A DNA stretch of 64,000 bases from Salpingoeca rosetta. Lineage: Eukaryota; Protista; Choanoflagellata. The position numbers and the translations under genes were made by a program. The stretch lies in contig JAWQFM010000002.1 in NCBI GenBank assembly GCA_033442325.1, positions 87,174 through 151,173 of the forward strand. Direction: 5' to 3'. Below, piece by piece: positions 57,949 to 64,000 of this stretch (the stretch's first letter is position 1; each line of letters starts with the position of its first letter). Under the pieces are notes generated by a model that was not told the origin of the DNA, made no database searches, and saw only the letters and a program-made list of their open reading frames with translations.

Positions 57949-58835
57949 CGAATGCACAACAGCGAGCTGTTGAGTACGAGGGTGGTGTTTGGCCTCTCGG
58001 TTGTTTGGAAGAGTCATAGGGAGGCGCAATAGCATGAAGGACCTTACGTCGTCCTCGAAGATGTGAAGGTGGCGCATAAACTGTTTTCTCAAGTTGTTCT
58101 TCGGCAACATTCCATCCACGGCTTTCCTCACAACCTATAACACAAACAGCGGGGATGTGTGTGTGTGTGTGTGTGCGTGGGTGAAAAGGAGGGTGAGACT
58201 CGAAGGAGAGAAGCGCGTGTTTGGGATGAACATGCGTCGAGAAGAGTCATGGACTCGAACATGCACATGCGCGGCAACATGCACGCGCAAGCGTACCTCT
58301 GTTGGCTTGCGTGCGTGTAAGCTGGCAGCCGTCTCCTCCCGGAAACCGCCGGGCCAGCCCGTGTGCTTTCTGTACAGCTTCTGATTCCACTTGCGACCGG
58401 TGAAGACAACATCCTGCAACACGCAAGAAGGGCAACACAAGGGGGTTGGACGTCAGGCAAAAGACAATGACAAGCAAAGGGGCTTGAAATGGCCAGCGCA
58501 ACCATACACGCACGCACACATGCACGCACGCACATGCACGCAAAAGCAAATACAACACACACATGCACACACAGCACCCACGCTCACGCAAACACACTGA
58601 GCACCCACGCTCACGCACCCACGCACATGCACACACATCCACATGAGCACACCTTTGCATTGATGACGACGACGTGGTCTGGTGAGAGGACGCCGGGGTG
58701 GAAGGTGGGCTTTGTCTTGCCCCTCAACACAGCCGACACCATATTTGCCAGCCGGCCAACCTTCTGCCCACGCGCATCAACCAGGTACCATCGCTGCGTG
58801 TGCGTCAGCAGCGACTGCGAAAACTTGGTGGCCAT
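57240..58835 (-). CDS. MRPL13: Mitochondrial ribosomal protein uL13m
   Basis: Motifs RWYLVDARGQKVGRLA..LRGKTKPTFHP, DHVVVINA, KLYRKHTGWPGG and AVDGMLPKNNLR, over five exons. Confidence 0.93.
57391..57486 (+). repeat. 18-nt minisatellite (GAATGGTGGGTGGAAGAA), about 5 copies, in the last MRPL13 intron
   Basis: Directly visible. Confidence 0.85.
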
Positions 58836-59096
58836 GGTTGTTTGCTGTTTGCTCGCCCTCTCGCTTGCCCTCTCGCTTGCCCTGGCTGCTTGGCTGGTGA
58901 AGTGATGTGATGTGAAGGTCTGTGCCTCACGCTCTCTTGTCTTATCTTGTGTGGTGGCAGCAAGCAAGCGTGTGGTTCGAAAAATGGTTGTTGAGTTCAT
59001 AAATTTCTACAATCACCAGCTGCAAGTGAGACCACCACCAACAGCACCATTTTCACTTCGCAGGACCACCTTTACCCTCACACACAACCAACCGCC
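58836..59096. promoter_or_regulatory. Putative bidirectional promoter between MRPL13 and MMAB
   Basis: 261 bp between divergent ATGs; contains CGAAAAATGGT, also found at 8711-8721. Confidence 0.5.
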
Positions 59097-61033
59097 ATGG
59101 GGAGCAGACAAGACACAGGGCCGCAGGCGCGGAAGCCTCCAAAGTCCATGTTGTACACTCGGACCGGTGACAAGGGAACATCTCAGCTCTACACGGGCCA
59201 ACGCCGTCCAAAAACAGACATTGTGTTCGAATGCCTCGGTGAGTTGGCTTGTCACTCTGCATGTGTCTGTGTGCTTGTGTGCCTGTGTGTATGGCTGTGT
59301 GTCAGTGTGTGTGTGCGTTTCAGTGTGTGTGCGTGTGTGTGTTTCTGTGTGTCTGTGTGTGTGTCTGTGTGTGTGTGTCTGTGTTTCTGCCTATCTATCA
59401 GTCTGTCTCTGTCTGTATCTGTTCGTTTGCGTGTCTGTTCATCTCACCAGGTTGTTTCTGTCCACAACCACCCACACCCACACGCCTACCTTCTGTGCTG
59501 TTTGTGGACACCAGGACACGTGGATGAATTGAATTCACAGTTTGGCTTGGTCCGAGAGCACCTGGACGCACGCCTGCTGCACGACGTCGATGCTGATTTG
59601 CACGAGATTCAGTGTCTTCTCATGGAGCTGGGCACGCACATTGCCAGCCCTGGCGTGGTGTCCGTCAAGGTGTGCATGTGTATGTGCGTATGTGTCTGTG
59701 TCTGTGTGTGTCTATGCCTGTGCATGTGTGTCTGTCTGTGCCTGTGCATGTGTATGTTGTGTACGTGTGTTGCATGCACGCGTGCATGACTGTGCTGTAT
59801 GCACTGTGTGCCTCTGTCTATGTGTCTGTGTGTCTGCTTATGTGCATGGGTATGTGTACCTGTGCCTGTGTGTCTGCTTATGCGCCTGTGCCTGTGTCTA
59901 TGTCTGTGTGTCTGCTTATGTGCATGTGCATGTGTATGTTGTGTACGTGTGTTGCATGCACGCGTGCATGACTGTGCTGTGTGCACTGTGTGCCTCTGTA
60001 TGGGGTGGTCTCACGACGGTCATGGGTGTGCACGCGCGCCATTTCGGGAATTCCAGGACTTTGACGATGATGCAACGAACCTCAAGTGCGTTGTGTGCGT
60101 GTGCGTGGCAAAGGGAAGCACTCATGCGTTGGCTCTTTCAAGTGTTTGCTTTGTTCCATGTCTTTGTTTGCTTTTGCTTGTCCATGCTAACTCCACACGA
60201 GTAACTGCATCTGTAGGTGGCTGGAGCGCCGCATTGACGAGCTGGACAGCGAACTTCCGCCCCTCAGGAACTTCATTCTTCCCTCCGGCGGTAAGGCTGC
60301 CGCACACATGCACTTGGCGCGCTGTGTATGCCGCCGGGCAGAGCGCGCCCTTGTCCATCTCCGCCAATGCAGCAACGACGACGACAACGACGATAATGGT
60401 AGTGATGATGACGATGACGACGATAGTGGCGGTGCATGCTCGGCTGCTGCTCTCAAGTTCATCAACCGGTTGTCGGACTTTGCATTCTGCTGCGCACGCG
60501 TTTGTGCATTCAGGTGTGTGCCTGTGTCTCTGTGTCTGTCGATGTGTGTCTGTGGATGTGGATGTGTGTCTGTGGATGTGCGTCTGTCCGTCTATCTGTC
60601 TGTCTGTCTGTCTGCCTCTGTTTGTCTGTCTGTCTGTCTGCCTCTGTTTGTCTGTCTGTCTCTCTGTCTGTGCTGATCATCAGCTTATTATTCATCGGAA
60701 CTCACTGAACAGCATCCTGAGTACCCTCAAACTTATTCACTCACATGCGCTCGCACACACACACATGCGCACTCACTCACACACTCCCTTCCCCTCCTCC
60801 CTCCCAACGGTGTCCTGTCGCTTGTTCGCACCACCAGGACTGGCGGTATCGAGACGGTGTTTCAAAGCAAGCCGGACCGGCGGCACATTCACACACGAGC
60901 AGCAACCAGCAAGGAAGCACGTGCCCATGGTGGTGGAAGTGGAAGCAGCCAGGTCTTGGTGGTGGCAGCTGTGGCTGTGGCGGCGGCCGTATGTGGCGCT
61001 GCCATCATGCACACTGTTCGCCGGCACTCATAA
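59097..61033 (+). CDS. MMAB: PduO-type ATP:cob(I)alamin adenosyltransferase with C-terminal hydrophobic tail
   Basis: Motifs [53 protein letters not shown] and KFINRLSDF. Exons approx. 59097-59238, 59515-59669, 60057-60085, 60218-60513, 60838-61033. Confidence 0.92.
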
Positions 61034-61279
61034 ACGAACCGAAACGAATGAGCAGAACGAGAGCGCAACAGAGGGAGGGGAGGGAGTGGGAAAGAAAGGG
61101 AAAGAGAGTAGGAAGAGAGTAGAGACGCACGAAACAACATCATGTCATGTGTCAACAACACAGCACGCTTTCGCTTTTCGCTTCTCATCACAGCGAAAAC
61201 CGCGCACAAATCCACCCACGTGTTTGCTTTGCACACGCGATTTGAACCAACAAACAAAGCAAGCAAGCAAGAGACGAAG

Positions 61280-64000
<2,721 letters not shown>

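What the first reader, a model, noticed from the sequence alone, without database searches (positions are those of the whole stretch)
59097..61033. Cobalamin adenosyltransferase with a tail anchor instead of a mitochondrial presequence
Seen: only 18 residues precede LYTRTGD. The donor at 60514 joins the acceptor at 60837 in phase, continuing the conserved end ([25 protein letters not shown]). It then adds a linker, a 19-aa hydrophobic run [19 protein letters not shown] and a short basic end HTVRRHS*. Established: animal MMAB is a soluble matrix enzyme with an N-terminal presequence. A moderately hydrophobic TM plus basic tail typifies mitochondrial outer-membrane or peroxisomal tail-anchored proteins. 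Inference: AdoCbl is made on the cytosolic face of an organelle, implying different B12 trafficking or a cytosolic AdoCbl client such as class II ribonucleotide reductase.
Basis: partly seen in the sequence, partly recalled or inferred. Interest (0 to 1): 0.7.

Follow-up and report, generated by a model that had tools for sequence, protein, structure and literature searches.

The report
Membrane-anchored second B12 adenosyltransferase in choanoflagellates
This Salpingoeca rosetta gene encodes an intact vitamin-B12 adenosyltransferase with no mitochondrial leader and a C-terminal membrane anchor. It is a second copy, conserved across choanoflagellates, that sits beside an ordinary mitochondrial-type copy, which suggests coenzyme B12 is also made outside the mitochondrial matrix.

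Summary
A five-exon GT-AG gene (59097-61033, +) encodes 272 aa, identical to NCBI PTSG_11014 of Salpingoeca rosetta. It matches Pfam Cob_adeno_trans end to end, and its model best fits human MMAB. Eighteen residues precede LYTRTGD. The 60513/60838 junction continues the conserved domain end. The protein ends in a basic linker, a 19-aa hydrophobic helix and HTVRRHS.

Three things change the reading.
- The genome has a second MMAB gene on another contig, with a 55-75-aa leader and no anchor. The window gene is therefore an extra paralogue, not a retargeted sole MMAB.
- The short-N, anchored form recurs in Microstomoeca, Barroeca, Stephanoeca and two unnamed contigs. These form a supported clade, and three genomic loci share the last intron position.
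- C-terminal anchors also occur on unrelated eukaryotic MMABs, some fused to DUF5522, so they were gained repeatedly.

The genome holds methylmalonyl-CoA mutase and an RTPR-type class II ribonucleotide reductase, the latter already reported. That reductase carries a presequence-like N-terminal extension, so the client stays open. Sequence features do not settle which organelle takes the anchor: ER or mitochondrial outer membrane.

Verdict: real, a new variant of a known enzyme, moderately interesting.

The parts
58653..58835 (-). Neighbour gene: first coding exon of a bacterial-type (mitochondrial-type) ribosomal protein L13. It is divergent from the adenosyltransferase gene, and its ATG at 58835-58833 leaves only 261 bp between the two start codons.
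   Evidence: PF00572 Ribosomal_L13, E 1.2e-16, residues 16-62 of window:58611-58838:-. Sequence read.
58995..59007 (+). 13-nt promoter-proximal element GTTCATAAATTTC, 90 nt upstream of the ATG. The identical 13-mer lies upstream of the second MMAB gene on C18.
   Evidence: Single match in the 64-kb window. The 12-mer core occurs 6 times in the 55-Mb genome, each 8-170 nt upstream of an ATG in the same orientation. No flanking similarity between the two MMAB promoters.
59097..59238 (+). Exon 1: start codon, 18-residue N-terminus, ATP-binding motif [11 protein letters not shown], ending at ...FECL plus the first base of G48.
   Evidence: translation. PF01923 positions 1-28, E 4e-07. Donor CCTCG|gtgagt.
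59515..59669 (+). Exon 2: HVDELNS...[21 protein letters not shown] (helices 1-2).
   Evidence: PF01923 positions 32-75, E 9.8e-08. Acceptor ..caccag|, donor TCAAG|gtgtgc.
60057..60085 (+). Exon 3: 29-nt micro-exon encoding DFDDDATNL plus two bases of K109.
   Evidence: Splice sites. Present in annotated protein P0001. An equivalent 35-nt micro-exon is seen in the Barroeca monosierra genomic contig L021.
60217..60513 (+). Exon 4: catalytic core [10 protein letters not shown]...NFILPSGG...[11 protein letters not shown]...[16 protein letters not shown] plus two bases of R208.
   Evidence: PF01923 positions 94-171, E 9.7e-25. Aligned to human MMAB 2idx.
60374..60433 (+). Species-specific 20-residue acidic insert (N162-G181, Asp/Asn-rich) in the loop between the last two helices of the domain.
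   Evidence: 20-column gap in the Microstomoeca and Barroeca orthologues. Low-confidence loop in the model, pLDDT 62-68.
60838..61033 (+). Exon 5: end of the domain ([10 protein letters not shown]), linker, hydrophobic helix, basic tail and stop.
   Evidence: Acceptor caccag| at 60832-60837. The domain continuation aligns with human ...EGNQEKIYMK and with mRNA-derived orthologues.
60863..60952 (+). Basic, low-complexity linker (Q217-Q246).
   Evidence: The 20 residues just before the helix have net charge +2. pLDDT about 61-62.
60953..61009 (+). Predicted transmembrane helix V247-M265 ([19 protein letters not shown]).
   Evidence: Kyte-Doolittle 19-mer mean 2.73, the only window above 1.1 in the protein. 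Falls within the predicted helix 244-271, pLDDT about 85. A hydrophobic segment occupies the same place in 5 related proteins.
61010..61033 (+). Seven-residue tail HTVRRHS (net +2, two His) and the TAA stop at 61031-61033.

Best explanation
The window gene encodes a catalytically competent PduO/MMAB-type ATP:cob(I)alamin adenosyltransferase. It is a choanoflagellate-specific paralogue of the ordinary mitochondrial MMAB.

Shown here:
- The gene model is sound.
- The full adenosyltransferase domain is present, with all family-invariant residues.
- There is no N-terminal leader.
- There is a single C-terminal hydrophobic helix followed by a 1-10-residue basic end.
- A second, leader-bearing and anchor-less MMAB gene exists in the same genome.
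- The anchored form is conserved in both choanoflagellate orders.

Inferred:
- The protein is inserted post-translationally as a tail-anchored protein. The (presumably trimeric) catalytic domain then faces the cytosol on an organelle surface, either the ER or the mitochondrial outer membrane. Sequence does not decide which.
- There it adenosylates cob(I)alamin outside the matrix.

Speculative: the client. The only AdoCbl enzymes found in the genome are methylmalonyl-CoA mutase and an RTPR-type class II ribonucleotide reductase. The anchored enzyme may supply the reductase, or it may capture cobalamin at a membrane hand-over point.
For: Gene model:
- Exon translations and splice sites agree with the 272-aa NCBI protein PTSG_11014.
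- All four intron positions recur in the Barroeca monosierra genomic contig L021.
- The last intron, phase 2 after A-F/Y, recurs in contig L027.

Enzyme identity:
- PF01923 at 175.6 bits over model positions 1-171/171.
- Human MMAB 2idx at E 4.5e-36.
- AlphaFold2 model with mean pLDDT 87.4. Its best Foldseek hit is human MMAB 6d5x_B: TM 0.89 on the target, 39% identity.
- All 28 columns invariant in a 51-sequence family alignment are kept, including Y20, T21, G24, D25, F128, R144, R148, R149, E151, R152, N192, R193 and D196.

Paralogy:
- A second PF01923 gene at G000:C18:~64400-66400, annotated as PTSG_12477.
- It has 55 residues (annotated start) or 75 residues (MFGRTLVAAAKRCVRSVGRGG... start) before KIYTRTGD, and no hydrophobic tail.
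- Stephanoeca diplocostata also has both forms, P0125 and P0127.

Conservation of the anchor:
- Microstomoeca, Barroeca, Stephanoeca, P0241 and P0268 all combine an 8-14-residue N-terminus (P0268 taken from its internal start MAAAPKSMLYT) with a C-terminal hydrophobic segment. Where it could be scored the tail charge is +1 to +2; no uncharged 17-mer window was found for P0241.
- Contig L026, which has an uninterrupted ORF, has in-frame stops upstream of its ATG.
- The clade of these proteins has support 99/88 in a careful ML tree.

Tail-anchor layout: one hydrophobic window only, at residues 247-265 of 272.

Clients present: methylmalonyl-CoA mutase, MMAA, and an RTPR-type reductase (also reported for Salpingoeca by Crona et al. 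2013, PMC3605638).
Against: - No localisation, topology or activity data exist.
- No read-level RNA evidence for S. rosetta was obtained.
- The organelle cannot be called. The Ala/Val-rich helix scores as ER-type on Kyte-Doolittle (GRAVY 2.73), while the +2 tail leans mitochondrial.
- One member of the clade (P0242) has no hydrophobic tail, so the anchor is not obligatory.
- The class II reductase ORF has a long, acid-poor N-terminal extension that may target it to mitochondria. That would remove the most obvious cytosolic client.
- MMACHC was not detected. That search had no working control, so it says nothing either way.
Confidence: 0.6

Rival explanations
1. The protein is still a mitochondrial enzyme. 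It is imported by a non-canonical or internal signal, and the C-terminal helix anchors it in the inner membrane with the domain in the matrix, next to methylmalonyl-CoA mutase.
For: - The gene sits head-to-head with a mitochondrial-type ribosomal protein L13 gene, 261 bp between start codons.
- The canonical C18 copy shows an apparent frameshift in the assembly. If that were real, another enzyme would have to serve the mutase.
- Both MMAB genes share a 13-nt promoter-proximal element.
Against: - N-termini in the clade are 8-18 residues before the first catalytic motif. They are Lys/Pro-rich and too short for an amphipathic presequence.
- A matrix-facing domain with a C-terminal anchor normally needs a presequence.
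- Stephanoeca keeps an apparently intact canonical copy alongside the anchored one.
Confidence: 0.1
2. The domain is retained, but the protein does not make AdoCbl for a client. It acts as a membrane-bound cobalamin-binding or hand-over protein (chaperone, scavenger of ingested bacterial corrinoids), or the hydrophobic end is a regulatory or degradation element rather than a stable anchor.
For: - MMAB is known to act as an AdoCbl chaperone as well as an enzyme (PMC8633584 abstract).
- Choanoflagellates eat bacteria.
- One clade member lacks the tail.
- The craspedid proteins have unusual extra cysteines ([16 protein letters not shown]) and Ser instead of Thr in the ATP motif region, HIASP.
Against: - Every family-invariant residue, including the ATP-binding N-terminal motif and the Arg/Glu cluster, is kept. 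That argues for catalysis.
- The hydrophobic segment is conserved in position and character in six proteins while its sequence drifts, as expected of a true membrane span.
Confidence: 0.12
3. Gene-model artefact: the hydrophobic last exon or the short first exon is wrongly joined, and the real mRNA encodes an ordinary soluble or presequence-bearing MMAB.
For: No S. rosetta reads could be laid on the locus. The annotation of the sister gene on C18 is visibly imperfect.
Against: - The junction continues the conserved domain end in phase.
- ORFs marked 'type:complete' in transcriptome assemblies of Microstomoeca and Stephanoeca show the same N- and C-termini.
- Intron positions are conserved in two other genomic contigs.
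- Intron retention would give a Cys/Val/Leu read-through of a TG-rich intron.
- Upstream there is an in-frame stop and a neighbouring gene 261 bp away.
Confidence: 0.03

Closest known systems
Human/animal MMAB (cblB protein; PduO-type ATP:cob(I)alamin adenosyltransferase), PDB 2idx, 6d5k, 6d5x
   Same: Same domain over its full length and the same fold (TM 0.89, 39% identity). The YTxTGDxG ATP motif, FILPSGG, the RxxCRRAER cluster and NRLSD are all kept.
   Different: - No mitochondrial presequence: 18 residues before the first motif, against tens of residues in animals.
- About 55 extra C-terminal residues forming a basic linker, a transmembrane helix and a short basic tail.
- A 20-residue acidic loop insert.
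- It belongs to a choanoflagellate-only paralogue clade rather than grouping with the animal sequences.
The second MMAB of the same genome (PTSG_12477, G000:C18) and the canonical copies of Stephanoeca (P0127) and Didymoeca (P0162)
   Same: Same family and same catalytic residues. The same 13-nt promoter-proximal element lies upstream in S. rosetta.
   Different: - The canonical copies have 43-75-residue Arg-rich, acid-poor leaders and end soon after the domain, with no hydrophobic segment.
- By eye, the introns I located in the C18 gene do not coincide with those of the window gene.
Classical tail-anchored proteins (Fis1, OMP25, cytochrome b5, Sec61-beta, ACBD5)
   Same: A single transmembrane helix within the last ~30 residues, a short lumenal tail, no signal peptide, and basic residues flanking the helix.
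   Different: None of the classical examples carries a cofactor-synthesis enzyme of this family. A full-text search for 'MMAB' together with 'tail-anchored' found no paper.
Other eukaryotic MMAB homologues with C-terminal hydrophobic ends found here (P0256, P0299, P0356, P0361; DUF5522 fusions P0354, P0337, P0342, P0370)
   Same: Adenosyltransferase domain plus a C-terminal hydrophobic segment with a short basic end. Several also have short N-termini.
   Different: - They fall outside the choanoflagellate clade.
- At least 6 changes of state are needed on the tree, and a single origin is rejected (p-AU 0.0069), although the group was defined after the tree was seen.
- Four carry an N-terminal DUF5522 Cys-rich domain.
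- Their organisms are mostly unknown (metagenomes, MMETSP).

Membership tests
PduO/MMAB-type ATP:cob(I)alamin adenosyltransferase (Pfam PF01923) | Full-length match to the family model above its gathering score | tested here: met
   175.6 bits (cut-off 24), model positions 1-171/171, protein residues 19-205. Exon-wise matches.
PduO/MMAB-type ATP:cob(I)alamin adenosyltransferase (Pfam PF01923) | N-terminal ATP-binding motif (I/L)YTxxGDxG(T/S) and the conserved FILPxGG / RxxCRRAER / NRLSD residues, which include sites of human cblB mutations (R186, R190, R191, E193; residue numbers recalled from memory) | tested here: met
   [11 protein letters not shown]. [19 protein letters not shown] and NRLSD align to human 2idx. 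All 28 invariant columns of a 51-sequence alignment are kept.
PduO/MMAB-type ATP:cob(I)alamin adenosyltransferase (Pfam PF01923) | Helical-bundle fold of the solved enzymes | tested here: met
   AlphaFold2 mean pLDDT 87.4, pTM 0.77. Foldseek top 50 are all PduO-type enzymes or close homologues. Best is human 6d5x_B: E 1.5e-12, TM 0.89 on the target.
PduO/MMAB-type ATP:cob(I)alamin adenosyltransferase (Pfam PF01923) | Homotrimer with active sites at subunit interfaces; adenosyl transfer from ATP to cob(I)alamin | not testable with these tools
   Needs a multimer model or biochemistry. Only the monomer was modelled.
Mitochondrial-matrix MMAB as in animals | Cleavable N-terminal presequence (tens of residues, Arg-rich, acid-poor) | tested here: not met
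   18 residues with Asp6, three Pro and two Gly, and 8-14 residues in the orthologues. Canonical choanoflagellate, animal and ichthyosporean copies have 43-94. No upstream coding potential. No dedicated predictor (TargetP/MitoFates) was available.
Mitochondrial-matrix MMAB as in animals | Orthology to animal MMAB | tested here: inconclusive
   The anchored proteins form their own clade (99/88), sister to canonical Stephanoeca (87/88), while animals group elsewhere with some fungi. The backbone of the 189-column tree is unresolved.
Tail-anchored membrane proteins | One transmembrane segment, located within about 30-40 residues of the C-terminus, with a short tail | tested here: met
   Residues 247-265 of 272, followed by a 7-residue tail. 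Kyte-Doolittle mean 2.73. Falls within predicted helix 244-271.
Tail-anchored membrane proteins | No N-terminal signal peptide or other hydrophobic segment | tested here: met
   The best 19-residue window outside the last 45 residues scores 1.06 and lies inside a domain helix. The N-terminus is polar.
Tail-anchored membrane proteins | Post-translational insertion with the N-terminal domain in the cytosol; identity of the target organelle | not testable with these tools
   GRAVY and tail-charge values are ambiguous between ER and mitochondrial outer membrane under the rules of PMC5450235.

The most novel reading that the evidence does not exclude
Choanoflagellates, and independently several other protist lineages, run a second, extra-mitochondrial AdoCbl-synthesis station. 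This is an MMAB trimer tethered to an organelle surface. It serves the cytosolic or otherwise non-matrix demand for coenzyme B12, for example the class II ribonucleotide reductase, or it gates cobalamin hand-over at the membrane. On this reading, eukaryotic B12 trafficking has an unrecognised membrane-anchored branch that animals lost.
Probability: 0.3. Interest if true: 0.7.

Novelty: new variant of a known kind. Interest (0 to 1): 0.55.

Why it matters
In the animal model of B12 trafficking, adenosylcobalamin is made only inside mitochondria, by soluble MMAB, for a single client. Several protists, choanoflagellates included, also carry an AdoCbl-dependent class II ribonucleotide reductase. 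I found no account of where its cofactor is made in eukaryotes.

A conserved MMAB paralogue that lacks a leader and carries a tail anchor is a concrete, testable candidate for a non-matrix source of AdoCbl. [quoted passage not shown] Similar anchors appear independently on other eukaryotic MMABs, some with a DUF5522 domain. This suggests that membrane tethering of the enzyme is a recurrent solution rather than a curiosity.

Tried and rejected
- Joined spliced model: I did not type or search a joined translation. I searched exon by exon by reference. From then on I used the database protein P0001 returned by the exon-4 search, which equals the model.
- NrdJ model hit at C2:2737532-2739393: rejected. 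The ORFs there are an ordinary class I large subunit, with NSGTP..QLSSCFLL and NLCTEI motifs.
- PF02310 hit on C17: rejected as an IMP-dehydrogenase-like false positive. The C5 hit is the methionine synthase B12 domain.
- The 13-mer GTTCATAAATTTC as a B12-specific regulatory site: rejected. The other four genomic copies lie upstream of unrelated genes, and none lies near the mutase, MMAA, reductase or MetH loci. It looks like a rare promoter-proximal element. Its presence at both MMAB genes remains a coincidence worth noting.
- GPI-attachment signal: rejected, because there is no N-terminal signal peptide.
- N-myristoylation of Gly2: the recalled PROSITE pattern is not met (Asp at the required small-residue position). 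This rests on memory only.
- A single origin for all anchored MMABs: rejected by the AU test.
- MMACHC and diol-dehydratase searches returned nothing but had no positive control, so they are uninformative. EutB was absent, with a working control.
Full report
**Organism and locus**

The window is G000:C2:87174-151173 of a 55.4-Mb, 68-contig assembly. I confirmed this: the exon-4 search returned NCBI protein PTSG_11014 [Salpingoeca rosetta] at 100% identity.

**Checking the observation**

Reading 58600-61500 gives a five-exon gene on the + strand: 59097-59238, 59515-59669, 60057-60085, 60217-60513 and 60838-61033. Every intron is GT...AG, and the introns are TG-rich.

The exon translations, joined through the split codons G48, K109 and R208, are the same as the 272-aa database protein P0001.

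- Eighteen residues precede LYTRTGD.
- The donor at 60514 and the acceptor ending at 60837 join in phase, and the sequence continues as [10 protein letters not shown]. This aligns with the end of human MMAB (...EGNQEKIYMK).
- The protein then runs through a basic linker and a 19-residue hydrophobic segment (247-265), and ends HTVRRHS.
- That segment is the only strongly hydrophobic window in the protein: 2.73 against at most 1.06 elsewhere.
- In the AlphaFold2 model it falls within a helix (244-271, pLDDT about 85) set apart from the domain by a lower-confidence linker.

A hidden presequence exon is unlikely. The frame upstream of the ATG is closed by a stop at 58992-58994 with no intervening ATG. 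A divergent bacterial-type ribosomal protein L13 gene (PF00572, E 1.2e-16) has its start codon only 261 bp away.

From then on I used the database protein that the exon search returned.

**What the protein is**

- P0001 matches Pfam Cob_adeno_trans over the whole model: 175.6 bits, positions 1-171 of 171.
- Its best solved relative by sequence is human MMAB (2idx, E 4.5e-36).
- Its model (mean pLDDT 87.4) superposes best on human MMAB 6d5x_B, with TM 0.89 on the target and 39% identity. Bacterial PduO-type enzymes follow.
- In a 51-sequence alignment spanning animals, fungi, amoebozoans, algae and bacteria, all 28 invariant columns are kept. These include the ATP-binding YT..GD, F128 of FILPSGG, the R144/R148/R149/E151/R152 cluster and N192/R193/D196.

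Nothing suggests loss of catalysis.

A 20-residue Asp/Asn-rich insert (N162-G181; 60374-60433) is specific to S. rosetta. It sits in a loop where other eukaryotic homologues also carry inserts.

**The main correction: it is a second copy**

Searching the whole genome with PF01923 found a second gene at G000:C18, about 64400-66400 on the minus strand. NCBI annotates it as PTSG_12477, 'Corrinoid adenosyltransferase MMAB'.

That gene has 55 residues before KIYTRTGD in the annotated model. It has 75 if translation starts at the ATG that follows the promoter-proximal element, giving MFGRTLVAAAKRCVRSVGRGG..., a classical Arg-rich, acid-free beginning. It ends ...ELVYLSATKRRERSLTRRTAQHQQQ with no hydrophobic segment.

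So S. rosetta has a conventional leader-bearing MMAB as well as the anchored one.

**Conservation**

The exon-4 search and a profile search returned proteins with the same layout:

| Protein | Source | N-terminus and C-terminus |
|---|---|---|
| P0002 | Microstomoeca roanoka | transcriptome ORF marked complete; 8 residues before LYT; ends with a hydrophobic segment then GKPPRAAPSV |
| P0004 | Barroeca monosierra | 10 residues before LYT; hydrophobic segment then QRRS |
| P0125 | Stephanoeca diplocostata, an acanthoecid (the other order of choanoflagellates) | 14 residues before LYT; ...LTLWAAATSLFLGPILATLR |

Stephanoeca also has a canonical copy with a 60-residue leader and no anchor (P0127), and Didymoeca has a canonical copy (P0162).

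An exhaustive profile search of 1.84 billion representatives added three relatives:

- P0241, on contig L026, which has an uninterrupted ORF and in-frame stops upstream of its ATG.
- P0268, on a genomic contig. Its real start is evidently MAAAPKSMLYT, and its last intron is retained in the called protein.
- P0242, which has no hydrophobic tail.

In a careful maximum-likelihood tree (58 rows, 189 columns, domain columns only), these seven proteins form a clade with support 99/88. That clade is sister to canonical Stephanoeca (87/88). The backbone of the tree is otherwise unresolved. The S. rosetta canonical copy sits on a long branch, probably because its annotation is flawed (see 'Noticed in passing').

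Gene structure agrees:

- The Barroeca genomic contig L021 has introns at the same four positions, including a micro-exon and the intron after ...CAF-R.
- L027 has the last intron at the same place and phase.
- By eye, the introns I located in the canonical S. rosetta copy do not coincide with those of the window gene.

The simplest history is a duplication in the choanoflagellate stem. One copy then lost the leader and gained the anchor.

**Anchors elsewhere**

Among the 379 family members fetched, a scan for C-terminal hydrophobic windows also picked out the following:

- P0256, P0299, P0356 and P0361, with short or modest N-termini.
- P0354, P0337, P0342 and P0370, which carry an N-terminal DUF5522 Cys-rich domain instead of a leader.

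They come from metagenomes, MMETSP or unnamed transcriptomes and fall outside the choanoflagellate clade. The trait needs at least six changes on the tree. Forcing all anchored proteins into one clade costs 51.8 log-likelihood units (p-AU 0.0069). The group was defined after the tree had been seen. Membrane tethering of this enzyme has therefore arisen repeatedly.

**How it most likely works**

The layout is that of a tail-anchored protein:

- no signal peptide;
- one helix within the last 30 residues;
- a tail of 1-10 residues with net charge +1 to +2;
- basic residues upstream of the helix in the three craspedid species.

Such proteins are inserted post-translationally with the N-terminal domain in the cytosol. 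This is established knowledge and is reviewed in PMC5450235.

Which membrane takes it is not decided by sequence. In yeast, ER anchors have GRAVY above 1.75. In mammals, hydrophobic helices with low tail charge go to the ER, intermediate tail charge favours mitochondria, and high charge favours peroxisomes. The craspedid proteins have GRAVY 2.2-2.7 with +2 tails, and Stephanoeca has 1.67 with +1. I rate ER and mitochondrial outer membrane as roughly equal and peroxisomes as unlikely. The head-to-head arrangement with a mitochondrial-type L13 gene is a weak hint towards a mitochondrial connection.

**Possible clients**

The genome contains the following:

- One methylmalonyl-CoA mutase gene, on C6.
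- MMAA/MeaB, on C12.
- The methionine synthase B12 domain, on C5.
- An RTPR-type class II ribonucleotide reductase, on C7. It scores 195.5 + 39.2 + 35 bits against TIGR02505 over model positions 17-702 of 724, and matches PF21995.

No EutB was found. Class II reductase genes in Salpingoeca and Monosiga were already reported by Crona et al. 2013 (PMC3605638), and another note of this scan flagged the same gene.

However, the reductase ORF begins with a 150-200-residue Arg/Ser/Thr/Ala-rich extension. From its internal Met (MLAAARRTTPSVAAAACRG...), the first ~35 residues have no acidic residue. This looks like a presequence. The reductase may be mitochondrial and served by the canonical MMAB. What the anchored enzyme supplies remains open.

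**Comparison with what is known, and novelty**

The enzyme family, its fold and its mitochondrial role in animals are well known. The gene itself is in NCBI, as a hypothetical protein. I found no paper containing both 'MMAB' and 'tail-anchored'. Papers on eukaryotic B12 use do not mention anchored or paralogous adenosyltransferases in the passages I read (Orlowska et al. 2021, PMC8085122; Crona et al. 2013).

I class it as a new variant of a known kind: a conserved, leaderless, tail-anchored paralogue of MMAB.

**Noticed in passing**

- The C18 gene's conserved exon (IQCMLQDVGAHVATP...) cannot be joined in frame to the next exon in the assembly. The frame shifts within or just after a CCTTTCC run. 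The NCBI model avoids the problem by using another acceptor, which drops the conserved helix. This may be a homopolymer error or a real lesion, and I could not tell without reads.
- A 13-mer, GTTCATAAATTTC, lies upstream of both MMAB genes. Its 12-mer core occurs only six times in the genome, always 8-170 nt upstream of an ATG in the same orientation.

**Verdict**

Interest is 0.55. Confidence in the tail-anchored, cytosol-facing reading is 0.6.

Noticed in passing
L007 (G000:C18:62500-68500), minus strand, about 2960-2880 and 4031-3890: The canonical MMAB gene (PTSG_12477) has an apparent +1 frameshift in the assembly, within or just after a CCTTTCC run. The conserved IQCMLQDVGAHVATP reading cannot be joined in frame to the next exon. 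The NCBI model uses a different acceptor that drops this helix. It also starts at an upstream ATG (MDDGRL...) and splices out the presequence-like MFGRTLVAAAKRCVRSVGRGG... start, using the GT of the promoter-proximal 13-mer as its donor. Either an assembly or annotation error, or a damaged gene.
   Followed up: partly
window 58995-59007 (+); L007 3941-3929 (-); also G000:C3:1382247, C9:360243, C9:1171282, C15:822389: GTTCATAAATTTC lies upstream of both MMAB paralogues, with no flanking similarity between them. The 12-mer core occurs only 6 times in 55 Mb, every time 8-170 nt upstream of an ATG in the same orientation. It looks like a rare promoter-proximal or TSS element. The other four genes appear unrelated to B12.
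   Followed up: partly
L020 (G000:C7:1043000-1052000), minus strand, 6211-3260: The RTPR-type class II ribonucleotide reductase is split by introns. It has a 150-200-residue Arg/Ser/Thr/Ala-rich, initially acid-free N-terminal extension (MLAAARRTTPSVAAAACRG...) that looks like a mitochondrial presequence, and it ends in a Cys pair (...ACAGPDSCEL).
   Followed up: partly
proteins P0354, P0337, P0342, P0370 (marine metagenomes, TARA, MMETSP): A three-part architecture in unidentified marine eukaryotes: an N-terminal DUF5522 Cys-rich domain (CCGCGCRHCP), then an MMAB domain, then a C-terminal hydrophobic segment with a basic tail.
   Followed up: partly
proteins P0123, P0124, P0136, P0189, P0243 versus P0048, P0134, P0141, P0142 and others: Early-diverging fungi fall into two separate MMAB clades in the tree. 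The first clade (98/93) includes proteins with short N-termini (e.g. VPKSGLYT in Paraphysoderma). This hints at leaderless MMAB forms outside choanoflagellates too.
   Followed up: no
window 58653-58835 (-): A bacterial-type (mitochondrial-type) ribosomal protein L13 gene lies head-to-head with the anchored MMAB gene, 261 bp between start codons. This is a possible bidirectional promoter.
   Followed up: no
window 60374-60433 (+): A 20-residue Asp/Asn-rich insert is specific to S. rosetta. It lies in the same loop where Dunaliella, a cercozoan and metagenomic homologues carry unrelated acidic or long inserts.
   Followed up: no
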